Positions 381 through 40,837 of a DNA stretch of 64,000 nucleotides are shown here, one piece after another. The stretch is from Heptranchias perlo (taxonomy: Eukaryota): contig NW_027138407.1 in assembly GCF_035084215.1 (NCBI RefSeq), forward strand, positions 1,550,001 through 1,614,000, written 5' to 3'. The notes under the pieces were generated by a model. The model did not search any database, had not been told where the DNA came from, and saw only the letters and a program-made list of their open reading frames with translations. The first letter of the stretch is position 1. Every line of letters begins with the position of its first letter. Made by a program: the position numbers and the translations under genes.

Positions 381-1340
381 TGGCTCTCTCCCAACGCTTT
401 CCTCCCCTGTCTGTGTCTGTCAGCCTCATTTTCTTTCTCTGTGTCTCTCTGTCAATCTTTCTGTCTCCCTCTCTTTCTCTCTTTCTGTGTGCTTACCTCT
501 GTGTCTTTATCCCTATACCGCACTCTGTCTCTATTTCCGTTTCTGTCCCTCTCTCTCGATCTCTCTCTGTCCGTGACACTCTATTTCTCTGCCATTCACT
601 AATTCTGTCTGTTACTCTGTTTTTCTCTTTCAGTTTCTATGCCTCCCTCTGTCTCAATCTCTTCCTCCCCTTTCTCGCTCCAAATCTCTCTGTGTGTCCC
701 AATCTCTTTCTTTATTTCTCTCCCTCTCTCTCTTTCTTTCTCTCTTTCACTCTCTCTCTCACTCTTTCTATCTCTCTCTCATTAAGGTGACAAGTAAAAA
801 ATATCCGAATCAGTCTCGATCCCCGGTATGACGGAGTTCTCGCCACAATCAATGAGCTCCATTCATAGTCACCCAGTCTTAAGGTCACGAGGGACACGAG
901 AAGTAGAGAAATCTCTTCAAAGCTGCCGGCGGATTTGAACTTGTACCAGTAAAGTGCTGATTTCAGTCAGTCACAATTTCTAACGCTTCGGATCCCAGGG
1001 GCTTTGATGAGTGAAGTCCCTGAGGCCTCCCTTTGAGATGAGACAGTTTCTGAACGATGAGACCCGATGGATCTGCACCAGATCCAGGACTTTTACTTGT
1101 ACAGATTGATTATGCTCTTCATTCCAGAGGTCTGCAAGTCGGTGATAACAGGGGGCTGGAAATGTCTGAATCCGGCACTGAACTAATTGGTTGAGAAATG
1201 TCACATTTCCCAACACTGACAGCACTGACTTTAACGAGAGAAAACCGCTTGAATCAGCCTGGGATGAATCAGCTGGAGAAGAAGATGGGAAAATGTTTTA
1301 GGTTTGGGGAATATTATTGGAAGGTTCCAATATCACCGAC

Positions 1341-1385
1341 CTGTGAACAGGGCAATAAGTAGATCAGGCAAAGTTTCACGTCCAC
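1341..1385 (-). pseudogene. Orphan family-2 leader exon (decayed)
   Basis: Homologous to 40553-40598. ATG lost and frameshifted, with no V2 exon downstream. Confidence 0.75.
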
Positions 1386-2457
1386 TATTTCAGTCTAAAC
1401 TCCAGAAAAAAAGAGACTGTCTTTAAGGGGCCTACGACGGAAGGCGCTAAAACAGCGGAGGGATCTGATCAGATGTTCTGCGATTTATTTTTGTTCAAAT
1501 CAGCCTCGATCCCCAATATCACGGGGATTTGTGTCTCTCTGAACAATCATTTCCTGCATATGGCTATCAGAGAGCGCCCTCCTGTGGACAGTACAAGCCT
1601 CACACAGTTCATTGCAAATACAAACACAACAGATACACTCATAAACACGCACATGGAGACATTGAGAGATTAACACACACAAATACAGACAAACATATAT
1701 TTGCATACACGCCAACATAAACACAGATGCACCTAATGGTTGATATCTGTGGAGATGATTGATGTGCATTCAGCTCTAAGTTGTGCAAAATGACAGATCT
1801 TTAACAAATGATCAGAGAACGCCCACCTATGTGTACAATAATCCTCCCACAAAACATTCAACACACAGGTACAACCACGGACAGAGAGGCACTAACTGCT
1901 TGATTGTACCTCTCACATCAAGAAAATGCAAAGACCAGCCAAAATATGACACATGAACGGTTTTGACAGTGAAAATAAGGAGAATTTGTTTCCAATTGGA
2001 GAAGGAGCGGTAACCAGAGGACACAGATTTAAGGTGATCTGCAAAATTGCCGGAGGCGGCATGAGGAAACTTTATTTTTACGCACCGGGTTGTAATGATC
2101 TGGAATGCACTGCGTGAAAGGGTGGTGGAAGCAGATTCAATGGTAACTTTCAAAATGGAAGTCGATAAATACATAAAGGGGAAATATTTAAAGTAATATG
2201 AGGAAAGAGCAGGGGAATGGGAATAATTGGATAGTTCTTTTAAAGAGCCAGCACAGGCAGGATGGGCTGAATGGCGTCCTCATGTGCTGTGCCGACTCTG
2301 AGACATTATGTCTGTCGGTGCCGTTGCCTCTGTCTATCTGGCTGTCTTTCTTTCTTCCTATCTACATATTAGTTCACGAGCGCACCAATTGATTGAGAGG
2401 AGGTGAGTGACCTTTGTTCGTTTTTGTACAGTCTGACTGCGTCCCTGTAACAGTGTG

Positions 2458-2895
2458 GGCTGCATGGCACAGAGATACACGGCAGAGTCAGAGACAAGAG
2501 CCCCGGTGATACTTAAAGAAACCGTTTTGTTGGCTTTGTTCAAATTAGCAGAGAACCGATCTATGAAATCTGAAGACTTATCGACCTTCCCCGAGCTAAA
2601 GATCTTCATTAAATATCTCGGCGCACCCCCGGGATATTGGATGTACCAGAAGAGAGTTGGGTTATTGAATGTTGTCTCATAACTGCAGTCCAACATTACG
2701 GTCTGTTCTTCCTGAAACGTTAATTCAGGCGGATCCTGGGACACTGAGTCTTCGCCATTCGTTCCTGTAACAAAATACAGAATGTGTCAAAAGTATGGGA
2801 GTAAATGCAATCCATGAAACACACACTGACTTTGTAAACATAGACTCACCGAGCAGCACCATCATTAGTATCAGTAAGGAACATGGAGAGCGCAT
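2458..2895 (-). CDS. TCR alpha/delta V segment, family 1 (V1-2)
   Basis: Leader 2850-2895. V exon 2458-2764 with Cys23, Trp41 (WYIQ) and DSAVYLC. 23-RSS 2419-2457: CACACTG, 23-nt spacer, ACAAAAACG. Confidence 0.93.
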
Positions 2896-3618
2896 GGTGT
2901 GTGGTTTAGAGTTCGACAGAAAATAGCGGAATATTTACAATATGTTGACACTTCTGGCCTGATATCAAAGAGTAAACTCAGATCAGAGGAAGGATTCATT
3001 TCTTGGATAACTATGGGGCGTTTCCCAGAGACCGGATTGGGTGGTCTCTCAGAACGGATGCCAGATGAGCACCAATCACAGTTAATTGTGGACGAATTAA
3101 CTGATGGCTCTCGACAAACGCTTTCTTTCCCTGTCGGTGTCTGCCTGTCTCATTTTCTTTCTCTGTGTCTCTCTCTGTCATCTTTCTGCCTCCGTCTCGC
3201 TTTTTCTCTCTTTCTATCTGCTTACCTCTGTGTCCCCATCTCCATACGCCACTCTGTCTCTGTCTCCTTCTCTATCCGGCTGCTTCTCTCCCTCTGCCTG
3301 TGACACTCAATTTCTCTGTCTCTATTTCTGTCTCTGCCTACTGCTTTCTTTATCTCAGTCAGTCTCTGTGCCTTTCTCTGAATCACTCGCTTCCCGTCTT
3401 CCTCTCTCATTCTGTCTGGCCCAGTCTCTTTCTCTGTCTGTGTCTCTCTCTGTCTCTCGGTCTTTTTCTCCCTCTCTCTCACATTTCGCAACACTAACAA
3501 CACTGACCATAACGAGCGAAAACCGTTTGAATCCGCCAGTGAATAATCATCCGGAGATGGAGATGGGAAAATGTATCAGGATTGGGGAATATTGTTGGTA
3601 GATTCGAATATCACCGAC

Positions 3619-3663
3619 CTGTGATCAGAACAATAAGCAGATTCAGGCAGAGTTCACCTCCAT
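3619..3663 (-). pseudogene. Orphan family-2 leader exon (frameshifted)
   Basis: 45 nt long. A 1-nt deletion gives MEVNSA*, and a LINE is inserted just upstream of the ATG. Confidence 0.8.
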
Positions 3664-3667
3664 GATT

Positions 3668-5245
3668 TTTTTTATCAGTTCACGGGATGTGGGCTTCGCT
3701 GGCAAGGCCAGCATTAATTGCCCATCCCGAATTGCCCTTGAGAAGGTGGTGGTGAGCCGCCTTCTTGAACCGCTGCAGTCCGTGTGGTGACGGTTCTCCC
3801 ACAGTGCTGTTAGGAAGGGAGTTCCAGGATTTTGACCCAGCGACGATGAAGGAACGGCGACATATTTCCACGTCGGTATGGTGTGTGGCTTGGAGGGGAA
3901 CGTGCAGGTGGTGTTGTTCCCATGTGCCTGCTGCTCTTGTCCGTCTAGGTGGTAGAGGTCGTGGGTTTGGGAGGTGCTGTCGAAGAAGCCTTGGCGAGTT
4001 GCTGTAGTGCATCCTGTGGATGGTACACACTGCAGCCACAGTGCGCCGGTGGTGAAGGGAGTGAATGTTTAGGGTGGTGGATGGGGTGCCAATCAAGCGG
4101 GCTGCTTTATCTTGGATGGTGTCGAGCTTCTTGAGTGTTGTTGGAGCTGCACTCATCCAAGCAAGTGGAGAGTATTCCATCACACTCCTGACTTGTGCCT
4201 TGTAGATGGTGGAAAGGCTTTGGGGAGTCAGGAGGTGAGTCACTCGCCGCAGAATACCCAGCCTCTGACCTGCTCTCGTAGCCACAGTATTTATATGGCT
4301 GGTCCAGTTCAGTTTCTGGTCAATGGTGACCCCCAGGATGTTGATGGTGGGGGATTCGGCGATGGTAATGCCGTTGAATGTCAAGGGGAGGTGGTGAGAC
4401 TCTCCCTTGTTGAAGATGGTCATTGCCTGGCACTTATCTGGCACGAATGTTACTTGCCACTTATGAGCCCAAGCCTGGATGTTGTTCAGGTCTTGCTGCA
4501 TGTGGGCTCGGACTGCTTCATTATTTGAGGGGTTGCGAATGGAACTGAACACTATGCAGTCATCAGCGAACATCCCCATTTCTGACCTTATGATGGAGGG
4601 AAGGTCATTGATGAAGCAACTGAAGATGGTTGGGCCTAGGACACTGCCCTGAGTAACTCCTGCAGCAATGTCCTGGGGCTGAGATGATTGGCCTCCAACA
4701 ACCACTGCCATCTTCCTTTGTGCTAGGTATGACTCCAGCCACTGGAGAGTTTTCTCCCTGATTCTCATTGACTTCAATTTTACTAGGGCTCCTTGGTGCC
4801 ACACTCGGTCAAATGCTGCCTTGATGTCAAGGGCAGTCACTCTCACCTCACCTCTGGAATTCAGCTCTTTTGTCCATGTTTGGACCAAGGCTGTAATGAG
4901 GTTTGGAGCCGAGTGGTCCTGGTGGAACCCAAACTTAGCATCGGTGAGCAGGTTATTGGTGAGTAAGTGCCGCTTGATAGCACTGTCGACGACACCTTCC
5001 ATCATTTTGCTGATGATTGAGAGTAGACTGATGGGGCGGTAATTGGCCGGATTGGATTTGTCCTGCTTTTTGTGGACAGGACATACCTGGGCAATTTTCC
5101 ACATTGTCTGGTAGATGCCAGTGTTGTAGCTGTACTGGAACAGATTGGCTAGAGGCGCAGCTAGTTCTGGAGCACAAGTCTTCAGCACTACAGCTGAGAT
5201 GATGTCGGGGCCCATAGCCTTCGCTGTATCCAGTGCGCTCAGCCG
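3668..5245 (-). mobile_element. 5'-truncated non-LTR retrotransposon (CR1/L2 group), open RT domain
   Basis: ORF 3680-5326 contains NYRPISLLS, DIKAAFDRV, GVTQGSVLGP and FADD. It ends in an A-rich 3' tail and interrupts the unit sequence catga|ttccagtctgaactcc. Confidence 0.95.
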
Positions 5246-5400
5246 TTCCAGTCTGAACTCCAGAAGCAAGAGACTGCTTTCATCGGGCCTGGGATTGGAG
5301 ACGCTAAAATAGCAAACGGAACTCATCAGATGTTCTGGGATTCCTTTTTCTGCCCATTTCTGTCTCTCTTAACAATCATTTCCTGAAGATGATGATCAGG

Positions 5401-5420
5401 GAGCGCCCTCCTGTGGACAG
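5401..5420 (-). promoter_or_regulatory. CTCF-like site (representative of about 20 same-orientation copies)
   Basis: Minus strand TGTCCACAGGAGGGCGCTC resembles the CTCF core CCASYAGRKGGCRS. In units without the LINE insertion it lies about 150-190 bp upstream of the family-2 or orphan leader. Confidence 0.6.
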
Positions 5421-6235
5421 CACCAGGCACACACAGTTCATTGGAAATAAAAATACAGCTGATCCGCTCATCAACACACTGCGAGAGAGAGAGAGATTAA
5501 CACACGCAAACACAGACACACATACAAATGCAGGTGCATACACGACAAAATAAACCCAGATACATGTAATGGTTGATATCTGTGGAGATTATTGATGTGC
5601 ATTCAGCTGTAAATTGTTAAAAATGACTGATATTGAACACGTGATCAGAGAACGCCCTCCTGTGTATATTATAATCCTCACATAGCATTCGACACACACA
5701 CAACCATGGACTAGACGGGCACAAACGGTTTGACTGTGCCTCCCACATGAAGAAAATGGAAGACCAGCTATTACATGACTTATGAACGGTTTTGATAGTG
5801 TAAGTAAGGAGAAATCGTTTCCAGTGGTTGATGGGTCGGAAACCAGAGGACACAGAATTAAGGTGATCCGCAAAATTGTCAGAGGCGACATGAGGAAACA
5901 TGTTTTTATTTAGCGAGTTCAAATGATCTGGAATGCACTGCCTGAAAGGGTGGTGGAAGCAGATTCAATGGTACATTCAAAAGGGAATTCGATAAATGCA
6001 TGAAGGGAAAATATGTATCGCGCTTTGGGGAAAGAGCAGGGTAATGGGACTATTTGCATAGCCTTTTTAAAGAGCCGCCACAGGCACGACGGGCCGAATA
6101 GCATGCTCCTGTGCATGACTTGCTCTGATACTGTGATACTGTGTCTGTCGGTGCCTCAATATCTATCTTTCTTTCGATCCACCTATCAGTTCACCTGCGC
6201 ACCAATTCCGTGAGAGGAGGTGAGAGACCATTGTG

Positions 6236-6262
6236 GGTTTTTGTACGGTCTGGTGAGCGCAT
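6236..6262 (-). pseudogene. Deletion scar of a family-1 V gene
   Basis: Nonamer 6236-6244 plus 8 nt of spacer is joined directly to the first codons of the leader (ATG at 6262-6260). Heptamer, V exon, intron and most of the leader are missing, while both flanks are intact. Confidence 0.85.
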
Positions 6263-7416
6263 GTGGTGTGGCTTAGAGTTCACAGAAAATCGGGGAATGA
6301 TTTCAATATGTTGACCCTTCTGTTCTGATATTAAAGAGTAAACTCAGATCCGGGGCAGGATTCACTTATTGGAAAATTAAGGGGCGTTTCCCAGTGACCG
6401 GATTGGCTGGTCTCTCATAACTGATGCCAGCTGTGCACCAATCACAGTTAGTTGTGGACTAATTAACTGATGGCTCTCTCCCAACGCTTTCCTTCCCTGT
6501 CTGTGTCTGTCTGTCTCATTTTCTTTCTCTGTGTCTCTCTGTCAATCTTTCTGTCTCACCCTCGCTTTTTCTCTCTTTCTGTCTGCTTACCTCTGTGTCT
6601 TTATCCCTATACCACACGCTGTCTCTATTTCCGTTTCTGTCCCTCTCTCTCTCTCTCTCTGTGACACTCTATTTCTCTGTCTCTTACTACTTCTGTCTGT
6701 TGCTCTGTTTTTCTCTTTCATTTTCGATGCCTCCCTCTGCCTCAATCTCTTCCTCCCTTTCTCGCTCTATCTCTCTTTCTCTCTGTCCCAATCTCTTTCA
6801 TTGTTTCTCTCCATTTCTCTCTTTCACTCTCTTCTCTATCTCTCTCTCATTAAGGTGACAAGTGAAAAATATCTGAATCAGTCTCGATCCCCGGTATCAC
6901 GGAGTTCTCTCCACAATCAATGAGCTCCATTAATAGTCACCCAGTCTTAAGGTAACGAGGGACACGACAATTAGACAAATCTCTTCAAAGCTGCAAGCGC
7001 TAGCAATGGATTTGAACTTACACCAGTAAAGTGCTGATTTCAGTCAGTCACTACTTCAAACCCTTCGGATTCCAGGAGCTTTGAAGAGTGAAGCCCCTGA
7101 GGCCGCCTTTTGAGATGAGACAGTTTCTGAACGATGTGACCCGATGGATCTGCACCAGATCCAGGAATTTACTTGTACAGATGGATCCTGTTATTCACCC
7201 CAGAGATCTGCAAGTCGGTGCTAACACGGGGCCGGAAATGTCTGAATTTGAAACTGGATGAAGTGGTTGAGAACTGTCACATTTCCCAACACTGACAGCA
7301 CTGACCTCAACGAGAGAAAACCGCTTGAATCAGACTGAGAGTAATCATCCGGAGATGGAGATGGGAAAAAGTATCAGGATTGGGGAATATTGATGGAAGG
7401 TTCAAATATCACCGGC

Positions 7417-7462
7417 CTATGATCAGGACAATATCCAGAGTCAGGCAGAGTTTCACCTCCAT
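7417..7462 (-). pseudogene. Orphan family-2 leader exon (GC donor)
   Basis: MEVKLCLTLDIVLII-G followed by GCCGGT. Confidence 0.8.
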
Positions 7463-8000
7463 GTTTCCAGTCTGAACTCCAGAAACACGAGACTGCCTTT
7501 GCCTGACCTGCGATGGAAGATGCTGAAAGAGCAAAGGGTTCTGATGTGATGTTCTGGGATTTCCTTTTCTCTGCGTTTGTGTTTCGCGAAACAATCATTT
7601 CCTGCAGATGGTGTTCAGAGAGCGCCCTCCTGTGGACAACCGAAGCATCAAAAAGTTCATTGCAAGTACGAACACAACAGATATCTTCTGAACACACTTG
7701 GAGAGACAGAGAGATTAACACACACAAATACAGACACAGACACATGCATGTGCAATCACGTCAACATAAACCCAGATACACTTAATGGTTGATATCTGTG
7801 GAGATTATTGATGTGCATTCAGCTCTAAGTTGTTGAAGATGACTGATGTTTAACAAGTGATCAGGGAACGCCCCCCTGTGTATATTGTGATCCTCACATA
7901 CAGCATTCGACACACTCACACAACCACGGACAGACGGACACTAACGGCTTGACTGTGCCTCTCACATGAAGAAAATGCAAAGACCAGCCATTACATGACT

Positions 8001-8360
8001 CATGGACGGTTTTGATAGTGTAACTAAGGAGAAATTGTTTCCAATGGTAGAAGGTTCGGTAACCAGAGGACACAGATATAAGGTGATCTGCAAAATTGCC
8101 AGAGGCAACATGAGGAAACATTTTTTTATGCAGCGAGTTTTTATGATCAGGAATGCACTGCCTGAAAGGGCGGAGGAAGCAAATTCAGTGGTAACTTTCA
8201 AAAGGGAATTCGATAAATACTGGAAGGGAAAATGTTTAAAGGGTTATATGGAAAGAGCAGGATAATGGGACAAAGTGGGTCGTTCTTTCAAATAGCCAGC
8301 ACAGGCAAGATGGGCTGAATGGCCTCCTCATGTGCTGTGCCCACTCTGATATTATGATGC
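8001..8360 (+). mobile_element. CR1 LINE 3' fragment co-amplified in every family-1 unit (representative copy)
   Basis: Translates as GFDSVTKEKLFPMVEGSVTRGHRYK...FFMQRV...NALPE...GYMERAG (CR1 ORF2 C-terminus) plus the 3'UTR. Other copies start near 1953, 5781, 10856, 12057, 14338, 17050, 19270, 21750, 23945, 26145, 28610, 30808, 33275, 35480 and 37957. Confidence 0.85.
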
Positions 8361-8674
8361 GGTGATGTTATTTCTGTCGGTGCCTCTGTCCAACTAGCTT
8401 TCTTTCTTTCGTTCTATCTCTCCACATATCAGTTCACGAGCGCACCAATTCATTAAACAGCCGGCATAGTCACGACGGGCGGAATGGCCTCCTCATGTGC
8501 AGTGCCTACTCTCACACCATGATACTATGATACTTTGTCTGTCGGTGCCTCAATATATCTATTTATCTTTCCTTCTATCTACATGTCAGATCACCAGCGC
8601 ACCAATTCAGTGAGAGGGGTTGAGAGACCTTTGCTGGTTTTTGTACGGTCTGACTGCGATCCTGTAACAGTGTG

Positions 8675-9112
8675 GGCTGCATGGCACAGAGATACACGGC
8701 AGAGTCAGAGACAAGAGCCCCGGTGATATTTAAAGGAACCGTTTTGTTGGCTTTATCCAAATTAGCAGAGAACCGGTCTGCGAAATCTGAAGATGTGTCT
8801 CCCTGCCCGGCGCTATATATCTTCAATAAATATCTCGGAGCTTCCCCGGGATACTGGATGTACCAGAAGAGAGCGGGGTTCCTATCTGTTGTCGAGTAAC
8901 TGCAGTTCAGTGATACAGTCTGTCCTTCCTGAACCGTTAATTCAGGCGGATCCTGGGACACTGTGTCTTTGCCACTCGTTCCTGTAACAAAATACAGAAT
9001 GGGTCAAAATTCTGGGAGTAAATATAATCCATGAAACACAACATGACCATTTAAACATAGACTCACCGGGCAGCACGATCATTATTATCAGTAAGGAACA
9101 TGGGGAGCACAT
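8675..9112 (-). CDS. TCR alpha/delta V segment, family 1 (V1-3)
   Basis: Leader 9067-9112. V exon 8675-8981 open. RSS 8636-8674 CACACTG-23-ACAAAAACC. Confidence 0.93.
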
Positions 9113-10270
9113 GGTGTTTGGTTTAGAGTTCGACAGAAATAAACGGAATGTTTTCAATATGTTGACACTTCTAGTCTGATATTAAAGAGTAAACTCAGAT
9201 CCGGGGCAGGATTCACTTATTGGAAAACTAAGGGGCGTTTCCCAGGGACCGGATTGGCTGATCTCTCATAACTGATACCAGCTGTGCACCAATAACAGTT
9301 AGTTGTGGACTAATTAACTGATGGCTCTCTCCCAACGCTTTCCTTCCCTGTCTGTGTCTGCCTGTCTCATTTTCTTTCTCTGTGTCTCTCTGTCAATCTT
9401 TCTGTCTCACCCTCGCTTTTTCTCTCTTTCTGTCTGCTTACCTCTGTGTCTTTATCCCTATAGCACACGCTGTCTCTATTTCCGTTTCTGTCCCTCTCTC
9501 TCTCTCTCTCTCTGTGACACTCTATTTCTCTGTCTCTTACTACTTCTGTCTGTTGCTCTGTTTTTCTCTTTCATTTTCGATGCCTCCCTCTGCCTCAATC
9601 TCTTCCTCCCTTTCTCGCTCTATCTCTCTTTCTCTCTGTCCCAATCTCCTTCATTGTTTCTCTCCATTTCTCTCTTTCACTCTCTTCTCTATCTCTCTCT
9701 CATTAAGGTGACAAGTGAAAAATATCTGAATCAGTCTCGATCCCCGGTATCACGGAGTTCTCTCCACAATCAATGAGCTCCATTAATAGTCACCCAGTCT
9801 TAAGGTAACGAGGGACACGACAAGTAGACAAATCTCTTCAAAGCTGCAAGCGCTAGCAATGGATTTGAACTTACACCAGTAAAGTGCTGATTTCAGTCAG
9901 TCGCTAATTCTACCCCTTCAGATTCCAGGAGCTTTGAAGAGTGACGCCCCTGAGGCCGCCATTTCAGATGAGACAGTTTCTGAACGATGTGACCCGATGG
10001 ATCTGCACCAGATCCAGGAATTTTACTTGTACAGATGGATCCTGTTATTCATCCCAGAGATCTGCAAGTCGGTGCTAACAGGGGGCTGGAATTGTCTGAA
10101 TTTGAAACTGGATAAAGTGGTTGAGAAATGTCACATTTCCCAACACTGACAGCACTGACCTCAACGAGAGAAAACCGCTTGAATCAGACTGAGAGTAATC
10201 ATCCGGAGATGGAGATGGGAAAAAGTATCAGGATTGGGGAATAATGATGGAAGGTTCAAATATCACCGGC

Positions 10271-10316
10271 CTATGATCAGGACAATATCCAGAGTCAGGC
10301 AGAGTTTCACCTCCAT
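10271..10316 (-). pseudogene. Orphan family-2 leader exon (GC donor)
   Basis: Duplicate of 7417-7462. Confidence 0.8.
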
Positions 10317-13584: not shown

Positions 13585-13618
<34 letters not shown>

Positions 13619-13746
13619 ACAGTAGCAGCACTGACCTTAACGAGAGAAAACCGCTTGAATCAGCCTGGGAATAAACATCCGGAGATGGAGATGGGAAAAT
13701 GTATCTGGATTGGGGAATATTGTTGCAAGATTTCAATATCACCGAC

Positions 13747-28032: not shown

Positions 28033-28078
28033 CTGTGATCAGGACAATAACCAGAGTCAGGCACAGTTTCACCTCCAT
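28033..28078 (-). other. Orphan family-2 leader exon, intact
   Basis: MEVKLCLTLVIVLIT-G|GTCGGT. Confidence 0.85.
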
Positions 28079-30224: not shown

Positions 30225-30270
30225 GTTTGTTCAGGACAATAACCAGAGTCAGGCAGAGTTTCACCTCCAT
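30225..30270 (-). other. Orphan family-2 leader exon, open frame, weakened donor
   Basis: As 23362-23407. Confidence 0.8.
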
Positions 30271-31326: not shown

Positions 31327-31764
31327 GGCTGCATGGCACAGAGATACACGGCAGAGTCAGAGACAAGAGCCCCACTGATATTTAAAGGAACCGTTTTGTT
31401 TGCTTTGTCAAAATTAGCAGAGAACCGATCTGCAATGTCTGAAGATTTATCTCCCTGCTCCCATCTATATCTCCTCAGTAAATATCTTGGATCTTCCCCG
31501 GGATACTGGATGTACCAGAAGAGAGTTGGGCCACTGTCAGTTGTCGAGTAATGACAGTTCAGTATTACAGTCTGTCCTTCCTGAACCGTTAATTCAGGCG
31601 GATCCTGGGACACTGAGTCTTTGCCACTCGTTCCTGTAACAAAATACAGAATGTGTCAAAAGTCTGGGAGTAAATATAACCCATGAAATACACACTGACC
31701 ATTTAAACATAGACTCACCGGGCAGCACGGTCATTATTATCAGTAAGAAACATGGAGAGCACAT
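31327..31764 (-). CDS. TCR alpha/delta V segment, family 1 (V1-12, B-type)
   Basis: Leader 31719-31764. V exon 31327-31633. RSS 31288-31326 CACACTG-23-ACAAAAACC. Confidence 0.92.
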
Positions 31765-32237
31765 GGTGTGTGGTTTAGATTCGACAGAAAATAGCGGATA
31801 GTTTTCAATACGTTGCCACTTCTATTCTGATATTAAAGAGTAAACTCAGATCAGGGGCAGGATTCACTTATTGTAAAACTAAGGGGCGTTTCCGAGGGAC
31901 CGGATTGGCTGGTCTCACAGAACTGATGCCAAATCTGCACCAATCACAGTTAGTTATCGACTAATTAACTGATAGCTCTCTCCCAACGTTTTCCTTCCCT
32001 GTCTGTGTCTGTCTGTCTGTCTCATTTTCGGTTCTCTGCGTCTCTCTGTCAGCCGTTTTGTCTGCCTCTCGTTTTTCTCTCTTTCCGTCTGCTTACCTCT
32101 GTGTCTCTCTCCACATACCCCACTCTGTCTCTGTCTCCGTCTTCATCCGGCTGTCTCTATCCCTCTGCCTGTGACACTCTATTTCTCAGTCTCTATTTCT
32201 GTCTCTGTCGATTGCTCTTTTCATCTCTGTCAGTTTC

Positions 32238-32450
32238 CATCAATAATCTCCGCAGATATCAACCATTATGTGTATCTGGGTTTATGTTAACATGTATGCA
32301 TATGCATATGTGTGTTTGTCTGTGTTTGTGTGTGTTCATCTCTCTGTCTCTCTGGATGTGTTCATGCGTGCATCTGTTGTGTTTGTATTTGCAATGAACT
32401 CTGTGAGGCTTGTGCTGTCCACAGGAGGGCGCTCTCTGACCGACACCTGC
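32238..32450 (+). repeat. Inverted copy of the CTCF-like/CA segment
   Basis: Same junctions as 20705-20917. Confidence 0.9.
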
Positions 32451-32695
32451 TTCCTCTCTTTCTCTCCCTTTCTGTCTGTCTCACTTTGTTTCCCTCTCTC
32501 TCTCTCTGTTTCTCTTTCTCTCTCTCTCTCTATCCTTCTCTCTATCTCTATCTTTCTCTCATTTCCCAACACTAACAGCACTGGCCTTACCTAGAGAAAG
32601 CCGCTTGAATCACCCAGGGAATAATCATCCGGAGATGGAGATGGGAAAATCGAACAGGATTGGGAATATTGTTGGAAGGTTCCAATATCACCGAC

Positions 32696-32741
32696 CTGTG
32701 ATCAGGACAATAACCAGAGTCAGGCAGAGTTTCACCTCCAT
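32696..32741 (-). other. Orphan family-2 leader exon, intact
   Basis: MEVKLCLTLVIVLIT-G|GTCGGT. Confidence 0.85.
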
Positions 32742-33720
32742 GATTCCAGTCTGAACTCCAGAAACTCGAGGCTGCCTTTGCCGGTCCTGGGATTGGAGAC
32801 GCTAAAAGAGCAATGGAATCTCATCAGATGTTCTGGGATTTCTTTTTCTGCCCATTTGTGTCTCTCGAAACAATCATTTCCCGCAGGTGGCGTTCAGAGG
32901 GCGCCCTCCTGTGGACAGCACAAGCCTCACACAATTCATTGGAAATACAAACACAACAGATTTACTCAGAGAGAGACAGAGAGATTAACAAACACAAATA
33001 CAGACACACACGCATTTGCATAGGCAAACACGTCAACATAAACACAGATAAACATAATGGTCCATATCTGTGGAGATTATTGATGTGCATTTAGCAGTAA
33101 GTTGTTAAAAATAACTGATCTTTAACAATTGATCAGAGAACGCCCTCCTGTGTATATTATAATCCTCACACACAGCATTCGACACAAAGACACAAACACA
33201 GACAGACCGACACTCACCGCTTGACTATGCCTCTCACATGAAGAAAATGCAAAGGCCAGCCTTTACATGACTCATGATTGTTTCCAGTGCCAGAGGACAC
33301 AGATTTAAGGTGATCTGCAAAATTGCCAGAGGCAACTTGACGAAACATCTTTTAGGCAGCGAGTTGTGATGATCTGGAATGCGCTGCCTGAGAGGGCGGT
33401 GGAAGAAGATTCAAAAATAACTTTCAAAAGGGAATTCGATAAATACTTGAAGGCAAAATATTTAAAGGGCCATGGGAAAAGAGGAGGGCAATGGGACTAA
33501 TTGGATGGATCTTTTAATGATCCAGCACAGGCACGATGGGCCGAATGCCCTCCTCTTCGGCTGTGCCTAATCTGATACTACGATACTGTGATACAATGTC
33601 TGTCGGTGCCTCTATATATCGATTATATCTTTCACTACACCAGCGCACCAATTCAGTGACAGGAGGTGAGAGGCCTTTGTTGGTTTTTGTACTGTCTGAC
33701 TGCGCCCCTGTAACAGTGTG

Positions 33721-34157
33721 GGCTCCATGGCACAGAGATACACGGCAGAGTCAGAGACCAGAGCCCCGGTGATGTTTAAAGGAACCGTTTTCTTGGCTTT
33801 GTCCAAATTAGCAGAGAACCGGTCTGCAAAATCTGAAGATTTATCTCCCTGCCCCGAGCTATATATCTTCAATAAATATCTCGGAGCTTCCCCGGGATAC
33901 TGGATGTACCAGAAGAGAGTTCCGACACTGCTTGTTGTCGAGCAGCTGCAGTTCAGTATTATGGTCTGTCCTTCCTGAACCGTTAATTCAGGCGGAGCCT
34001 GGGACACGGAGTCTTTGCCACTCGTTGCTGTAACAAAATACAGGATGTGTCAAAATCTGCGAGTAAATGTAATGCATGAAACATACACTGACCATTTAAA
34101 CATAGACTCACCGGGCAGCGTGATCATTATTATCAGTAAGAACCATGGAGAGCACAT
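33721..34157 (-). CDS. TCR alpha/delta V segment, family 1 (V1-13, A-type)
   Basis: Leader 34112-34157. V exon 33721-34027. RSS 33682-33720 CACACTG-23-ACAAAAACC. Confidence 0.92.
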
Positions 34158-34897
34158 GGTGTGTGGTTTAGAGTTAGACAGAAAATAGCCGAATGTTTTC
34201 AATATGTTGACCCTTCTCGTCTGATATTAAAGAGTGAACTCAGATCAGGGGCAGGATTCACTTATTGGGAAACTAAGGGGCGTTTCCGAGGGACCCGATT
34301 GGCTGCTCTCTCAGAACTGATGCCAAATCTGCACCAATCACAGTTAGTTGTGGACTAATTAACTGATAGCTCTCTCCCAACGCTTTCCTTCCCTGTCCGT
34401 GTCTCGCTACTTGTCTCATTTTCGTTCTCTGTGTGTCTCTGTCAATCTTCCCGTCTTCCTCTCGCTGTTTCTCTCTTTCTGTCTGCTTACCTCTGTGTCT
34501 CTATCTCCATACCCCACACTGTCTCTGTCTCTGTCTACATCCGGCTGCCTCTATCCCTCTGCCTGCGACACTCTATTTCTCAGTCTCTGTTTCTGTCTCT
34601 GTCTATTACTCTCTTCATCTCCGTCAGTTCTTATGCATTTCGGTTCCTCTCTTTCTGACCCTTTCTGTCTGTTTCACTTTGTTTCTCTCTCACACACACT
34701 CGTTCTCTCTATCTATTTCTTTCTCTCTCTCTCTCTCTATCTTTCTCTCTCTCGCTCTCTCGACTCCCAACAGTAACAGCACTGACCTTAACGAGAGAAA
34801 ACCGCTTGAATCATCCAGAGAATAATCATCCGGAGATGGAGATGGGAAAATATATCAGGATTGGGGAATATTGTTGGAAGATTTCAATATCACCGAC

Positions 34898-34943
34898 GTT
34901 TGTTCAGGACAATAACCAGAGTCAGGCAGAGTTTCACCTCCAT
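34898..34943 (-). other. Orphan family-2 leader exon, open frame, weakened donor
   Basis: As 23362-23407. Confidence 0.8.
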
Positions 34944-35999
34944 GATTCCAGTCTGAACTCCAGAAACACGAGACTGCCTTTACAGGGCCTGGGATGGGAG
35001 ACGCTGAAACAGCAAACGGATCTCAGCAGATGTTCTGGGATTTCTTTTTCTGCCCATTTGTGTCTCTCTGAACAATCATTTCCTGCAGGTAGCGTTCAGA
35101 GAGCGCCCTCCTGTGGACAGCACAAGCCCCACAGAGTTCATTGCAAATACAAACACAACAGATATACCAATAAACACACAGAGACAGAGAGATTAACACA
35201 CACAAATACAGACACACACATATGAATGTCCATTCACTTTAACATAACCCCAGATACAATTAATGGTTGACATCTGTGGAGATTATTCATGTGCATTCAA
35301 CTGTAAGATTTTGAAGATGACTGATCTTGAACAAGTGATCAGAGAACGCCCTCCTGTGTATATTATAATCCTCACAGTCAGCATTCGTCACAGAGAAACA
35401 ACCACGGACAGACGGACACTAACGGCTTGACTGTGCCTCTCACATGAAGAAAATGCAAAGACCAGCCATTACATGACTCATGAACGGTTTTGATAGTGTA
35501 AATTAGGAGACATTGTTTCCAATGGGAGAAGGGTCGGTAACCTGAGGACACAGATTGAAGATGATCTGAAAAATTGCCAGAGGCGACATGAGGAAACATT
35601 TTTTTACACAGCGAGTTGTGATGATCTGGAATGCACTGCCTGAGGGGGTTGTGGAATCAGATTCAATAGTAACTTTCAAAAGGGAATTCGATAAATACCT
35701 CAAGGGAAAATATTTAAAGTGCTATAGGGAAAGACCAGGTTAATGGGACTAACTGGGTAGTTCTTTTAAAGAGCCAGCACGGGCAAGATGGGCTGAATGG
35801 CCTATTCATGAGTTGTGCCCACTGATATTATGATACTGTGTTATTATGTCTGTCGGTGACGGTACCTCTGTCCATCTCGCTGTCTTTCCTTCTTTCTATC
35901 TGTCCACATATCAGTTCATGAGGGCAACAATTCAGTGAGTGGAGGTGAGTGACCTTTGCTGGTTTTTGTACGGTCTGACTGAGCCCCTGTCACAGTGTG

Positions 36000-36437
36000 G
36001 GCTGCATGGCACAGAGATACACGGCAGAGTCAGAGACAAGAGCCCCACTGATATTTAAAGGAACCGTTTTGTTTGCTTTGTCAAAATTAGCAGAGAACCG
36101 ATCTGCAATGTCTGAAGATTTATCTCCCTGCTCCCAGCTATATCTCCTCAGTAAATATCTTGGATCTTCCCCGGGACACTGGATGTACCAGAAGAGAGTT
36201 GGGCCACTGTCAGTTGTCGAGTAACGACAGTTCAGTATTACAGTCTGTCCTTCCTGAACCGTTAATTCAGGCGGATCCTGGAACACGGAGTCTTTGCCAC
36301 TCGTTCCTGTAACAAAATACAGAATGTGTCAAAAGTCTGGGAGTAAATATAATCCATGAAATACACAATGACCATTTAAACATAGACTCACCGGGCAGCA
36401 CGATCATTATTATCAGTAAGAAACATGGGGAGCACAT
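36000..36437 (-). CDS. TCR alpha/delta V segment, family 1 (V1-14, B-type, extra Cys in WYIQC)
   Basis: Leader 36392-36437. V exon 36000-36306, same translated V region as V1-10. RSS 35961-35999 CACACTG-23-ACAAAAACC. Confidence 0.92.
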
Positions 36438-36910
36438 GGTGTGTTGTTTAGATTGGACAGAAAATAGCGGAATGTTTTCAATACGTTGCCACTTCTATTC
36501 TGATATTAAAGAGTAAACTCAGATCAGGGGCAGGATTCACTTATTGGAAAACGAAGGCGCGTTTCCGAGGGACCGGATTGGCTGGTCTCTCAGAACTGAT
36601 GCCAAATGTGCCCCAATCACAGTTAGTTGTGGACTAATTAACTGATGGCTCTCTCCCAACGCTTTCCTTCCCTGTCTGTGTCTGTCTGTCTGTCTCATTT
36701 TTGGTTCTCTGCGTCTCTCTGTCAGTCGTTTTGTCTGCCTCTCGTTTTTCTCTCTTTCCGTCTGCTTACCTCTGAGTCTCTCCCCAAATACCCCACTCTG
36801 TCTCTGTCTCCGTCTTCATCAAGCTGTCTCTATCCCTCTGCCTGTGACACTCTATTTCTCAGTCTCTATTTCTGTCTCTGTCGATTGCTCTTTTCATCTC
36901 TGTCAGTTTC

Positions 36911-37123
36911 CATCAATAATCTCCGCAGATATCAACCATTATGTGTATCTGGGTTTATGTTAACATGTATGCATATGCATATGTGTGTTTGCCTGTGTTT
37001 GTGTGTGTGAATCTCTCTGTCTCTCTGGATGTGTTCATGCGTGTATCTGTTGTGTTTGTATTTGCAATTAACTCTGTGAGGCTTGTGCTGTCCACAGGAG
37101 GGCGCTCTCTGACCGACACCTGC
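36911..37123 (+). repeat. Inverted copy of the CTCF-like/CA segment
   Basis: Same junctions as 20705-20917. Confidence 0.9.
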
Positions 37124-37369
37124 TTCCTCTCTTTCTCTCCCTTTCTGTCTGTCTCACTTTGTTTCCCTCTCTCTCTCTCTGTTTCTCTTTCTCTCTCTCT
37201 CTCTATCCGTCTCTCTATCTCTATCTTTCTCTCATTTCCCAACACTAACAGCACTGGCCTTACCTAGAGAAATCCGCTTGAATCACCCAGGGAATAATCA
37301 TCCGGAGATGGAGATGGGAAAATCTAACAGGATTGGGGAATATTGATGGAAGGTTCCAATATCACCGAC

Positions 37370-37415
37370 CTGTGATCAGGACAATAACCAGAGTCAGGCA
37401 CAGTTTCACCTCCAT
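37370..37415 (-). other. Orphan family-2 leader exon, intact
   Basis: MEVKLCLTLVIVLIT-G|GTCGGT. Confidence 0.85.
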
Positions 37416-38451
37416 GATTCCAGTCTGAACTCCAGAAACACGAGACTGCCTTTGCCAGGCCTGGGAATGGAGACGCTAAAAGAGCAATGGAATCTCATCA
37501 GATGTTCTGGGATTTCTTTTTCTGCCCATTTGTGTCTCTCGAAACAATCATTTCCTGCAGGTGGCGTTCAGAGGGCGCCCTCCTGTGGACAGCACAAGCC
37601 TCACACAATTCATTGGAAATACAAAAACAACAGATTTACTCATAAACACACAGAGAGACAGAGAGATTAACACACACAAATACAGACACACACACATTTG
37701 CATATGGATACACGTTAACATAAACCCAGATAAACATAATGGTCCATATCTGTGGAGATTATTGATGTGCATTTAGCTGTAAGTTGTTAAAAATTACTGA
37801 TCTTTAACAAGTGATCAGAGAACGCCCTCCTGTGTATATTATAATCCTCACACACAGCATTCGACACACAGACACAACCACGGACAGACGGACACTAACG
37901 GCTTGACTGTGCCTCACATATGAAGAAAATGCAAAGACCAGCCATTACATGACTCATGGTCGGTTTTGATAGTGTAAATAAGGAGAAATTCTTTCCAATG
38001 GTAGAAGTGTCAGAAACCAGAGGACACAGATTTCAGGTGATCAGCAAAATTGCTCGAGGCCACAAGACGAAACATTTTTAACGCAGCGAGTTGTGATGAT
38101 CTGGAATGCACGGCCTGAAAGGGTGGTGGAAGCAGATTCAATAGTAACTTGCAAAAGAAAATTAGATAAATTCATGAAGGGAAAATATTTAAAGGGCTAT
38201 AGGGAAGGAGCAGGATAATGGGACTAATTGGTTAGCTCTTTTAAACAGCCGGCACAGGCATCTTTGGGCGGAATGGCCTCCTCTTGTGATGTGCCTACTC
38301 TGATACCATGATACCATGATACAATGTCTGTCGGTGCTTCCATATATCTATCTATCTTTCTTTCTATCTACATATCTGTTCACTAGCGCATCAATTCAGT
38401 GAGAGGAGGTGAGGCTTTTGTACAGTCTGGCTGCGGCCCTGTAACAATGTG

Positions 38452-38889
38452 GTCTCCATGGCACAGAGATACACGGCAGAGTCAGAGACAAGAGACCCGC
38501 TGATATTTAAAGGAACCGTTTTCTTGGCTTTGTCCAAATTAGCAGAGAACCGGCCTGGGAAATCTGAAGATTTATCTCCCTGCCCGGAGATATATCTCCT
38601 CAGTAAATATCTCGGAGCTTCCCCGGGATACTGGATGTACCAGAAGAGAGTTGGGCCACTGTCAGTTGTCGAGTAACTGCAGTTCAGTATTACGGTCTGT
38701 CCTTCCTCAACCGTTAATTCAGGCGGATCCTGGGACACTGAGTCTTTGCCACTCGTTCCTGTAACAAAATACAGAATGTGTCAAAAGTCTGGGAGCAAAT
38801 ATAACCCATGAAACACACACTGACCATTTAAACATAGACTCACCGGGCAGCATGATCATTATTATCAGTAAGGAACATGGGGAGCACAT
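38452..38889 (-). CDS. TCR alpha/delta V segment, family 1 (V1-15)
   Basis: Leader 38844-38889. V exon 38452-38758. Weaker RSS 38413-38451 CACATTG-23-ACAAAAGCC. Confidence 0.9.
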
Positions 38890-40114
38890 GGTGTGTGGTT
38901 TAGATTTCGACAGAAAATAGCGGATAGTTTTCAATATGTTGAACCTTCTAGTCTGATATTAAAGATTAAACTCAGATCAGGGGCAGGATTCACTTATTGG
39001 GAAACTAAGGGCCGTTTCCCAGGGACCGAATTGGCTGGTCTCTCAGAACTGATGCCAAATGAGCACCAATCACAGTTAGTTGTGGACTAATTAACTGATG
39101 GCTCTCACCCAACGCTTTCCTTCCCTGTCTGTGTCTGTCTGTCTCATTTTCTTTCTCTGTGTCTCTCTGTCAATCTTTTTGTCTCCCTCTCGCTTTTTCT
39201 CTCTTTCTGTATGCTTACCCCTGTGTCTCTAATCCTATACCCGTCCCTTTCTCTAAATCTATCTCCGTCTCTGTCCATCTGTCTCTCTCTCCCTGTCTGT
39301 GACACTCTATTTCTCTGTCTTTCTCGATTTCTGTCTGTTACTCTCTGTATCTCTCTCAGTTTCGATGCCTCTCTCTGTCTCAATCTCTTCCTTTCTTTCT
39401 CGCTCTGTCTCTCTCTCTCTCTCTCTGTCCCACTCTTTGTCTCTCTCTGGATCTCCCGCTTTTTTTCTCTCTCTCTTTCTCTCTCTCTCTTTCTCTTTCG
39501 CTCTCTCACTCATTAAGGTGACAAGTGGAAAATATCTGAATCAGTTTCGATCCCCGGTCCCACGGAATTCCCTCCACAATCAATGAGCTCCATTAATAGT
39601 CACAGTCTTAATATCACCAATGACATGACAAGTAGACATATCTCTTCAAAGCTGCCGGCCGTACCAATGGATTTGAACTTGTACCAGTAAAGTGCTGATT
39701 TCAGTCATTCACTATTTCTAACCCAGGAGCTTTGAACAGTGAACCCCTGAGGCCGCCCTTTGAGATCAGACAGTTTCTGAGCGATGTGACCCGACGGAGC
39801 TGCACCAGATCCAGGAATTTTACTTGTACAGGTGGATCCTGTTATTCGTCCCAGAGGTCAGCAAGTCGGTGCGAACAGGGGGCTGGAAATGTCTGAATTT
39901 GACACTGGATTAAGTGGTTGAGAAATGTCACATTTCCCAACACTGACAGCACTGACCTTAACTGGAGAAAACCGCTCGGAACAGGGTGTATTTTCGCATT
40001 AATCTCCTGTAAAATACTCTGGGATACAATCCCTGGTATTTTCCCGGATCCCACCTTTGACGCCGACCTGTGCCCTGTTTTTGTATGAGTCCCGAGGGAC
40101 CCTTATTCACTGTG

Positions 40115-40598
40115 GGTCTCAGTGCACAGTAATACACGGCGCTGTCTGTGATCTTCAAGCGTTTCACGGATAAGTGAAAAGTGCCCTCTTTCTGGTTGAG
40201 ATGCGCTCTGAAGTGTTGAAAGCCTGAAGCCGTGTCGTTATACCCATAACTGTCGGCTCTGAGCATATACTGAGGGACTCGGTGGGGATACTGGCGGTAC
40301 CAGAACAGGTAATAGTCTGTAGCTGAACCCGATACAGAGTAACTACAGGTTATTGCTGAATCTGCATCCTCTTCTGATTCGACTCCTTGTTCTGACTGGG
40401 ACACCGAGTCTCCGTTACTCATCTCTGCAAATAAACAGTGGAGACAAGGCGGGTTATACAGAGGGACAGACAGTGAATAATCCCCTGGAGAAGGAGATAG
40501 GAGTTTGCATGAGAATTGGAGAATATTGTCGGAAGTTTCCAATATCACCGACCTGTGATCAGGACAATAACCAGAGTCAGGCAAAGTTTCATCTCCAT
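40115..40598 (-). CDS. TCR alpha/delta V segment, family 2 (V2-1)
   Basis: Leader 40553-40598 MEMKLCLTLVIVLIT-G (donor AG|GTCGGT). V exon 40115-40424 after TTTGCAG (EMSNGDSVSQ...TC...FWYRQ...DSAVYYCALR). RSS 40076-40114 CACAGTG-23-ACAAAAACA. Confidence 0.93.
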
Positions 40599-40837
40599 GG
40601 TATCAGTCACACCTCCAGAAACAAGGGGCTGTGATCACTGCCTTCACCGGGTCTGGAATGGGAGAAACTAAAACTCAGCGGGGATGTCATCCGATGTTCT
40701 GGGATTTCTTCTCCCCGCCCATTTATGTTTCTCCGAACAGTCACTTCCTGTAGATGGGGATCATGATCTTTAATAAGTGATCAGAGAGCGCCCTCCTGTG
40801 AACAGCACAAGCCGCACTCAGAGCTTTGGAAATAAAC

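What the first reader, a model, noticed from the sequence alone, without database searches (positions are those of the whole stretch)
1200..40600. Sixteen V1 units carry an orphan promoter and leader exon of the other V family: possible dual-leader V genes
Seen: the intact V2-1 unit reads ...gaaaaccgct [about 490 bp: 3' flank, RSS, V exon, acceptor; about 39977-40466] cagacagtgaataatc...leader. In 15 of the 16 family-1 units the two flanks are directly joined (e.g. 3520-3550, 18595-18630); in the unit at 11281 a later deletion removed the junction. The V2 exon was therefore lost once in an ancestral V2-V1 pair, which then amplified, and V2-1/V1-15 preserves the ancestral layout. Six orphan leaders are fully intact (13747, 16478, 21163, 28033, 32696, 37370) and four more keep the frame and the GT. 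Both leader families are 46 nt with phase-1 donors. Inference: an orphan leader could splice in frame to the V1 exon 0.9-1.3 kb downstream, giving those V genes a second promoter and signal peptide, or a germline transcript running across the V1 RSS.
Basis: partly seen in the sequence, partly recalled or inferred. Interest (0 to 1): 0.85.

Follow-up and report, generated by a model that had tools for sequence, protein, structure and literature searches.

The report
Leader-only V-gene relics in shark array
Each repeat of a shark T-cell-receptor V-gene array carries the leftover front end of a second V gene whose main exon was deleted, and the evidence says these leftovers are passive passengers of recent duplication, not a second working start for the neighbouring gene.

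Summary
On the minus strand, 16 copies of a V2-type upstream region, 46-nt leader and about 81 nt of intron lack the V2 exon and RSS. In all 15 copies that keep the splice donor, the intron stub joins the V2 3' flank at one shared junction.

The single deletion followed by cassette amplification is supported. The dual-leader reading is not.

- **RNA:** in the only RNA-like runs on offer (contigs, one sample), V1 and V2-1 splice from their own leaders. No contig covers a relic and no joint leaves one.
- **Lesions:** 10 of 16 relic leaders carry a lesion or a weakened donor, against 1 of 16 V1 own leaders.
- **Neutral expectation:** 7.9 of 15 should keep ATG, frame and GT; 10 do.
- **Variation:** relic leaders vary no less than adjacent non-coding DNA (Fisher p 0.26 and 0.21). 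They do vary less than the transposon-derived flank (p 0.019).

Splicing of an upstream V leader to a downstream V exon is known in mouse TRBV12-2/TRBV13-2, so the idea remains possible but unobserved here. An earlier scan note (s1-883245) reports the same kind of relic 54 kb before this window.

The parts
37288..37570 (-). Reference V2 relic. Leader 37370-37415 (intact), intron stub 37292-37369, junction about 37280-37291, V2 3'-flank remnant 37226-37279, upstream region to about 37700.
1267..1489 (-). V2 relic. Leader 1341-1385: ATG changed to GTG plus a 1-nt deletion.
3537..3667 (-). V2 relic. Leader 3619-3663 with a 1-nt deletion that creates a stop. Its upstream region (5246-5398) is separated by a LINE insertion.
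7331..7617 (-). V2 relic. Leader 7417-7462 in frame, donor GT changed to GC. It lies upstream of the exon-less V1 remnant at 6251-6321.
10185..10471 (-). V2 relic. Leader 10271-10316 in frame, donor GT changed to GC.
11281..11677 (-). V2 relic with a split leader (11499-11523 and 11281-11300). A transposon piece sits at about 11301-11498. Donor, junction and the whole V1 are deleted.
13661..13936 (-). V2 relic, leader 13747-13792 intact.
16392..16667 (-). V2 relic, leader 16478-16523 intact.
18615..18896 (-). V2 relic, leader 18697-18741 with a 1-nt deletion (frameshift); GT kept.
21082..21363 (-). V2 relic, leader 21163-21208 intact.
23280..23562 (-). V2 relic, leader 23362-23407. Frame and GT kept; exon end AAC instead of CAG.
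25476..25748 (-). V2 relic, leader 25558-25603. Frame and GT kept; exon end AAC.
27952..28233 (-). V2 relic, leader 28033-28078 intact.
30143..30415 (-). V2 relic, leader 30225-30270. Frame and GT kept; exon end AAC.
32615..32896 (-). V2 relic, leader 32696-32741 intact.
34816..35088 (-). V2 relic, leader 34898-34943. Frame and GT kept; exon end AAC.
35961..36437 (-). Reference V1 gene. Own leader 36392-36437, intron 36307-36391, V exon 36000-36306, heptamer 35993-35999, 23-nt spacer, nonamer 35961-35969.
1..38889 (-). The other 14 V1 genes, given by the first base of the ATG: 171 (cut by the window start), 2895, 9112, 13014, 15302, 17971, 20230, 22631, 24827, 27101, 29494, 31764, 34157, 38889. 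Each spans about 476 nt downward from its ATG. All own leaders are intact with GT donors.
6251..6321 (-). V1 remnant: V1 upstream region and the first 9 or so leader bases, fused to the V1 RSS spacer and nonamer. The V exon is deleted.
40076..40598 (-). Intact V2-1. Leader 40553-40598, intron 40425-40552, V exon 40115-40424, heptamer 40108-40114, nonamer 40076-40084. The stretch missing from the relics corresponds to about 39985-40471.
43105..49956 (-). Three further V2 genes at about 43105-43627, 45619-46141 and 49434-49956 (97-99% identical to V2-1).
3680..5326 (-). Reverse-transcriptase ORF of a LINE (548 aa, RVT_1), inserted just upstream of the relic ATG at 3663.

Best explanation
The 16 'orphan' units are leader-only remnants of a V2-type TCR alpha/delta V gene.

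In one ancestral V2-V1 pair, a roughly 487-bp deletion removed the 3' part of the leader intron, the V exon, the RSS and about 90 nt (40076 to about 39985) beyond the nonamer. Its ends lie at short similar motifs in the intron and in the 3' flank. The resulting relic-plus-V1 cassette (2.2-2.7 kb) was then copied in tandem many times, most recently as 4.6-kb double cassettes that are 97% alike.

The relics ride along with the selected V1 genes. They look well kept because the copies are young, and they decay about as fast as the DNA beside them. V1 genes are expressed from their own promoter and own 46-nt leader.

Shown here: the anatomy, the single junction, the lesions, and own-leader splicing. 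Inferred: that the relic promoters are silent and the relics have no function.
For: 1. **Anatomy and single origin.** 16 relic hits, with the V2 exon found only in the 4 V2 genes. The same junction is present in 15 of 15 relics that keep the donor. The relic units are colinear with V2-1/V1-15.
2. **Young tandem copies.** Double cassettes are 97% identical and older units 80-91%.
3. **Lesions.** 10 of 16 relic leaders are damaged or weakened, from at least 5 separate events. Among V1 own leaders, 15 of 16 are intact and the one loss is a large deletion. Fisher p = 0.002 for fully intact copies, though the copies are not independent.
4. **V1 does not depend on the relic.** Three frame-shifted relics keep their GT donor (1341, 3619, 18697) and all three lie upstream of V1 genes whose own leader is intact (ATG 171, cut by the window start; 2895; 17971).
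5. **Neutral simulation.** At each copy's own flank rate, 7.9 of 15 relics should keep ATG, frame and GT; 10 of 15 do.
6. **Variation.** In the 11-unit alignment, 8 of 46 leader sites vary against 62 of 236 in the adjacent upstream region and intron stub (p 0.26). In the 15-relic alignment, 16 of 48 sites vary against 160 of 364 non-CpG flank sites (p 0.21).
7. **RNA.** Run X1 shows GT..AG joints for the V1 own-leader intron (38757 to 38843; 2 contigs in X1, 1 in X2) and for the V2-1 leader intron (40424 to 40553). A third contig shows an own-leader joint of another V1 copy. Depth is 0 in every bin from 36518 to 37853 in all 3 runs, and no joint involves 37370. At the 88% setting, 10 of the 14 relics compared, including 5 of the 6 intact ones, are at least 90% like the laid copy.
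Against: - The relic leader lies at the conserved end of the unit. Mean pairwise difference is 0.063, and the lowest 50-nt window of the whole unit (0.035) spans the relic ATG (37436-37387).
- It has fewer variable sites than the transposon-derived flank: 8 of 46 against 128 of 362, p 0.019.
- Derived states run at 0.375 per site against 0.568 in the flanks (Poisson p 0.04; 0.054 against non-CpG flank sites).
- Its reduction relative to its flanks (about 0.66) resembles that of the real V1 leader (about 0.6).
- The intact relic donor has the same sequence as the V2-1 donor that is spliced in X1. Phase and frame fit the V1 exon.
- The RNA evidence is weak. It comes from contigs only, one sample, unknown tissue. 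The tool skipped some repeat stretches between relic and V1 and warns that holes prove nothing.
Confidence: 0.72

Rival explanations
1. Dual-leader V genes. In the six units with an intact relic, the relic promoter fires in some T-cell stage and its leader splices in frame to the V1 exon 0.86-1.3 kb downstream. This would give V1 a second promoter and a second signal peptide.
For: - Six leaders have ATG, an open 46-nt frame, and the same donor sequence as the expressed V2-1.
- The phase is the same as for the V1 leader.
- With its own V2 exon gone, the donor's next known acceptor downstream is the V1 exon's; other AG sites in between were not scanned.
- Mouse precedent: the TRBV12-2 L-PART1 is spliced to the TRBV13-2 V-EXON in 46,029 of 69,248 transcripts (bioRxiv 10.64898/2026.01.30.702900, passages).
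- Variation in the relic leader is somewhat low.
Against: - No contig over any relic and no such joint in X1-X3, while own-leader joints are present.
- 10 of 16 relics are damaged or weakened, as expected without selection.
- Frame-shifted relics with intact donors are tolerated upstream of V1 genes with intact own leaders.
Confidence: 0.1
2. Regulatory relic. The retained V2 upstream region serves the array without coding. It could be a binding site for an architectural factor (the CTCF-like motif about 160 nt upstream of the relic ATG) or a source of sterile transcripts that open the V1 RSS.
For: - The upstream region and leader of the relic vary less than the spacer and the 3' flank (0.06-0.10 against 0.125-0.167).
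- There is a second trough of variation around -214 to -166, where the motif lies.
- Germline transcription across an RSS does occur here: an X1 contig covers 39956-40202 across the V2-1 RSS with 2 mismatches.
- V genes are known to be transcribed before rearrangement (PMC7555362, passage).
Against: - Zero depth over the relic and the spacer in all 3 runs.
- The 15-nt motif has 3 of 15 variable sites, like its surroundings.
- It matches the CTCF consensus as I recall it at 13 of 15 positions, with mismatches in the core. That consensus was recalled, not tested by any tool.
- The spacer and 3' flank are rich in simple repeats, which inflates their apparent variation.
Confidence: 0.12
3. The relic exon is an internal exon, not a first exon. 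V2-type mRNAs would start at a further upstream exon and enter the 'leader exon' through an acceptor at the motif (...ttcacag|GAGGG), so the reader's 'orphan promoter' is mostly 5' UTR.
For: The X1 contig that carries the V2-1 leader splice matches 40553-40794 with no mismatch and then has about 30 letters that do not fit the window. All four V2 copies appear to share the genomic sequence just upstream of 40794, judged by eye from the ORF translations. Position 40795 follows a pyrimidine-rich ...cacag.
Against: This rests on one contig. The unmatched letters could equally be a library adapter at a true 5' end, or a graph artefact at a repeated word.
Confidence: 0.06

Closest known systems
V-gene remnants (5'-end-only V fragments) in TCR alpha/delta loci, for example channel catfish TRAD (PMC8656973)
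   Same: Partial V genes that keep only the 5' end, scattered among functional V genes of an alpha/delta locus and classed as non-functional remnants (passages).
   Different: Here a single remnant was copied at least 16 times as part of a tandem cassette, always in the same position and orientation upstream of a working V gene. Six copies still have an intact leader and donor.
Mouse TRBV12-2 L-PART1 spliced to TRBV13-2 V-EXON (chimeric leader usage in interleaved, duplicated V pairs)
   Same: Two V families alternate in a duplicated pair layout. The upstream gene's leader exon can replace the downstream gene's leader, in frame (bioRxiv 10.64898/2026.01.30.702900, passages). The original 1980s report is recalled only; I did not see it.
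   Different: In the mouse the upstream V is a complete gene and the chimeric RNA is abundant. Here the upstream V exon is deleted and no chimeric RNA was found.
Human germline VH transcripts in T cells that carry a novel 5' exon (ET) in place of the leader (PMC2189686)
   Same: An exon lying next to a pseudo-V gene is spliced to the V exon of another, unrearranged V segment and replaces its leader (abstract).
   Different: The ET exon does not encode a hydrophobic leader, and those transcripts were observed. Here the exon would encode a leader, but no transcripts were observed.

Membership tests
Germline TCR alpha/delta-type V gene segment (V1 and V2 families) | V-set immunoglobulin domain encoded by the V exon | tested here: met
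   Pfam V-set: E 1.4e-16 for V1 and 8e-10 for V2. The best single-domain PDB matches are TCR alpha V domains.
Germline TCR alpha/delta-type V gene segment (V1 and V2 families) | Split leader: a short first exon, a phase-1 intron, then the V exon | tested here: met
   46-nt leaders. Introns are 84-85 nt (V1) and 128 nt (V2). Both introns are seen spliced in X1.
Germline TCR alpha/delta-type V gene segment (V1 and V2 families) | RSS with a 23-nt spacer directly 3' of the V exon | tested here: met
   V1: CACACTG, 23 nt, ACAAAAACC. My pattern matched 6 of the 8 V1 genes it reached; the 2 misses are variants (CATACTG at the gene with ATG 20230; CACATTG and ACAAAAGCC at ATG 38889). Seven further V1 genes failed an earlier step of the script and their RSS was not examined. 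V2-1: CACAGTG, 23 nt, ACAAAAACA, read.
Germline TCR alpha/delta-type V gene segment (V1 and V2 families) | Location in the alpha/delta locus (linked J and C genes) | not testable with these tools
   Only an unchecked scan note places a NAR-TCR cluster with C-delta 339 kb before the window (s1-882942).
V-gene remnant or truncated pseudogene (leader-only) | Homology to the 5' part of a functional V gene of the same locus | tested here: met
   Relic consensus against V2-1: upstream region 82%, leader 44 of 46, intron bases 1-33 30 of 33. 16 BLAST hits.
V-gene remnant or truncated pseudogene (leader-only) | V exon and RSS absent | tested here: met
   The V2 exon plus RSS query finds nothing below 40100. 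The junction is read in 15 of 15 relics that keep the donor.
V-gene remnant or truncated pseudogene (leader-only) | No selective maintenance: lesions accumulate at about the neutral rate | tested here: inconclusive
   Lesions match the neutral expectation (10 of 15 against 7.9 expected) and variation matches adjacent DNA (p 0.21-0.26). But the leader varies less than the transposon flank (p 0.019).
Chimeric upstream-leader usage (mouse TRBV12-2/TRBV13-2 type) | An upstream leader exon in the same orientation and phase, with a usable donor | tested here: met
   Met for 6 of 16 relics. 4 more have a weakened donor context.
Chimeric upstream-leader usage (mouse TRBV12-2/TRBV13-2 type) | mRNA that joins the upstream leader to the downstream V exon | tested here: not met
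   No such joint and no coverage of relics in X1-X3. These are contig-level data from one sample, so this is a weak negative.

The most novel reading that the evidence does not exclude
In thymocytes of this shark, the six intact relic leaders, and perhaps the four with a weakened donor, act as alternative first coding exons for their V1 genes. The pattern would resemble mouse TRBV12-2 to TRBV13-2 splicing, but fixed by loss of the upstream V exon. A whole subfamily of V genes would then have two promoters and two signal peptides. The slightly low variation around the relic ATG would be the trace of that use.
Probability: 0.1. Interest if true: 0.5.

Novelty: new member of a known kind. Interest (0 to 1): 0.25.

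Why it matters
As it stands, this is a clear example of how antigen-receptor V arrays grow. A two-gene cassette lost one exon by a small deletion, and the scarred cassette was then amplified, so one pseudogene fragment became at least 16. That matters for annotation, because these leaders would otherwise be called as first exons or as hidden genes. It also helps date the duplications.

If the relic leaders were used after all, they would show that the leader swapping known from mouse TRBV12/13 is old and can become hard-wired. That would be of moderate interest to people who study V-gene regulation.

Tried and rejected
- **Discordant divergence between the two halves of the V2-1/V1-15 unit.** I first read the 73-77% identity of V2-1 to the relic upstream regions, against 86% for the V1 half, as a sign that V2-1's 5' half was brought in later. 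I dropped this. Against consensus sequences, V2-1's upstream region is 82% identical, and so is the neutral spacer of V1-15's unit.
- **RAG-made deletion.** The deleted stretch starts in the intron and ends about 90 nt beyond the nonamer. The second deletion, at 6251-6262, runs from leader base 9 or so into the RSS spacer. Neither ends at a heptamer border, so I rejected this.
- **Protein evidence for the chimeric leader.** A search with the V1 exon alone found only 2 proteins, at 60% and 47% identity, so that collection holds nothing from this species.
- **Rfam.** No match on 35600-43000.
- **Repeat search at 10900-11700.** Nothing found.
- **Literature searches for shark alpha/delta locus structure and for leader-only relics.** Searches gave no paper on this shark array. 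The papers read did not bear on the question. Supplementary tables of the mouse preprint (S5K, S5L) were not open to me and hold the per-gene counts.
- Its segment table used leader coordinates 9 nt off. It is replaced and should be ignored.
- **Joined junction search.** Exons were handled apart.

Full report
**What is there**

The window's first 40 kb hold a tandem array of V gene units on the minus strand. Both V families encode V-set domains (Pfam E 1.4e-16 and 8e-10). Their best single-domain matches among solved structures are TCR alpha V domains.

A V1 gene has four parts:
- a 46-nt leader (reference copy 36392-36437);
- an 84-85-nt phase-1 intron;
- a V exon of about 307 nt;
- an RSS: CACACTG, 23 nt, ACAAAAACC.

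Four V2 genes lie at 40076-49956 and are 97-100% alike. Scan notes call the genome a shark and place a NAR-TCR cluster with C-delta 339 kb before the window. I did not check those notes.

**The observation**

A BLAST of the V2-1 upstream region plus leader (40467-40800) finds 16 further copies between 1267 and 37570, at 73-83% identity. The V2 exon plus RSS (40100-40466) is found only in the four V2 genes.

In all 15 relics that keep the donor, about 81 nt of intron run directly into sequence that in V2-1 lies 3' of the RSS. In V2-1 coordinates, the relics lack roughly 39985-40471. The ends of the missing stretch carry short similar motifs, and neither end sits at the heptamer.

The 16th relic (11281-11523) has a transposon piece of about 198 nt inside the leader and a later deletion that removed the donor, the junction and the whole V1 gene.

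Would-be introns from relic donor to V1 acceptor measure 854-1305 nt.

- 14 relics precede a V1 with an intact own leader. One of those V1 genes is cut by the window start.
- One relic precedes a V1 remnant that has itself lost its exon (6251-6321).
- One relic has no V1.
- The 16th V1 gene follows the intact V2-1.

**History**

The single shared junction means one deletion that came before the amplification. The unit repeats every 2.2-2.7 kb. The three youngest 4.6-kb double units are 97% alike and the older units 80-91%.

From its 3' flank onward, V2-1/V1-15 is colinear with the older relic units at 85-86% identity over about 1.75 kb. So the V2-V1 pair layout is the likely ancestral cassette.

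Whether this particular copy is a surviving ancestor is open. In a maximum-likelihood tree of the V1 halves (14 rows; the V1 at the window edge was left out), V1-15 groups with two relic-bearing units at 99/97 support. The tree has no outgroup.

I first thought the two halves of the V2-1 unit had diverged by different amounts. That idea fell away when I compared against consensus sequences: 82% for the V2-1 upstream region and 82% for the spacer of V1-15's unit.

**Is the relic leader under selection?**

Evidence pointing towards selection:
- Across 11 regular units, the relic leader has 8 of 46 variable sites (mean pairwise difference 0.063). That is fewer than the transposon-derived flank (128 of 362; p 0.019).
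- The lowest 50-nt window of the unit (0.035) spans the relic ATG.
- Across 15 relics, derived states run at 0.375 per site against 0.568 in the flanks (Poisson p 0.04; 0.054 against non-CpG flank sites).

Evidence pointing against:
- The leader does not differ from the adjacent upstream region and intron stub (62 of 236; p 0.26).
- It does not differ from non-CpG flank sites in the 15-relic set (16 of 48 against 160 of 364; p 0.21).
- It ranks only at the 12th to 16th percentile of sliding windows.
- The kind of change matters most. At least five separate events damaged or weakened relic leaders: two single-base deletions, a start-codon loss, a donor loss and a transposon insertion, plus the clustered change at the exon end.
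- By contrast, 15 of 16 V1 own leaders have no indel, no lost ATG and no lost GT.
- A simulation that mutates the commonest relic leader at each copy's own flank rate predicts 7.9 of 15 copies keeping ATG, frame and GT; 10 of 15 do.
- V2-1 and the relic consensus differ at 2 of 46 leader bases. This is unremarkable if only the relic branch was free to change (P 0.20 at 9%).

Copies share ancestry, so all of these p-values are rough.

**RNA**

I laid them on 35850-40850 at 88% likeness.

Run X1 is clearly RNA. It carries GT..AG joints, read on the minus strand, at three places:
- the V1 own-leader intron (38757 to 38843; 2 contigs in X1, 1 in X2);
- the V2-1 leader intron (40424 to 40553);
- a third V1 own-leader joint from another copy (36305 to 38844, with one letter between).

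X1 also holds a contig across the V2-1 RSS (39956-40202, 2 mismatches), which is a germline transcript.

Every bin from 36518 to 37853, covering the relic and the spacer, has depth 0 in all three runs. No joint touches the relic donor. At this setting, 10 of the 14 relics compared, including five of the six intact ones, are at least 90% like the laid copy, so their transcripts should have been laid.

Limits: these are contigs, not reads; the tissue is unknown; the tool skipped some repeat stretches; and the tool itself warns that a hole proves nothing.

**Comparison with what is known**

- V remnants made of only the 5' end of a V gene are reported in the catfish TRAD locus (PMC8656973, passages).
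In mouse, the L-PART1 of TRBV12-2 is spliced to the V-EXON of TRBV13-2 in 46,029 of 69,248 transcripts, in a region where the two families interleave (bioRxiv 10.64898/2026.01.30.702900, passages).
- Human germline VH transcripts in T cells carry a foreign 5' exon in place of the leader (PMC2189686, abstract).
- So the idea is reasonable and not new in kind. What is missing here is any sign that it happens.

**Verdict**

The deletion-then-amplification history is supported. The dual-leader function is unsupported, though not excluded.

The best reading is passive leader-only V remnants carried along by recent cassette duplication (confidence 0.72). Interest is low to moderate. An earlier scan note (s1-883245) reports the same kind of orphan leader 54 kb before this window, so the array probably extends well beyond it. 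I could not check that.

Noticed in passing
window 6251-6321: A second, independent loss of a V exon. A V1 upstream region with the first 9 or so leader bases is fused to the V1 RSS spacer and nonamer, so only promoter and nonamer remain.
   Followed up: partly
window 40553-40794: The X1 contig that carries the V2-1 leader splice matches up to 40794 with no mismatch, giving a 5' UTR of at least 196 nt. It then has about 30 letters that do not fit the window. The break falls inside the CTCF-like motif, right after a ...ttcacag that could be a splice acceptor. It may be a true start site with an adapter, or an upstream exon.
   Followed up: no
window 39956-40202: An X1 contig runs from the V2-1 exon across its RSS into the 3' flank with 2 mismatches. 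This is a germline (unrearranged) V2-1 transcript. Depth fades over about 500 nt further downstream.
   Followed up: partly
window 38843-39141: Contigs from V1 copies about 88% like V1-15 extend to 252 nt upstream of the V1 ATG. V1 transcripts therefore have long 5' UTRs or start further upstream than expected.
   Followed up: no
window 37854-38354: A transposon-derived piece between each V1 3' flank and the next relic shows very high contig depth in all three runs (up to about 290,000 in the bin 38021-38187). It is an abundant expressed repeat family. No Rfam match.
   Followed up: partly
window 36914-37124 and 37575-37770: In the four youngest intact-relic units (relic donors 21162, 28032, 32695, 37369), a roughly 210-nt copy of the relic's upstream region lies inverted between the relic and the V1 promoter.
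   Followed up: partly
window 3680-5326: A LINE with a 548-aa reverse-transcriptase ORF (RVT_1, E 1.7e-35) is inserted a few bases upstream of a relic ATG, cutting that relic off from its upstream region.
   Followed up: partly
window 40830-41900, 43830-44460, 46340-48240, 50160-51390: Long arrays of an 18-nt-type microsatellite (ACACAAACACAGATAAAC-like) lie upstream of every V2 gene. They give many spurious long ORFs.
   Followed up: no
window 53924-56443: An 839-aa ORF made almost wholly of PPPLSTH-type repeats, with mirror ORFs on the other strand. It looks like a minisatellite, not a gene.
   Followed up: no
window 59041-60030: An intronless 329-aa rhodopsin-family GPCR ORF (7tm_1, E 2.1e-30) beside the V array.
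   Followed up: partly
window 19754-20230: The V1 gene with ATG at 20230 has the heptamer CATACTG, with the third base changed from the CAC core. It may recombine poorly even though its reading frame is intact.
   Followed up: no
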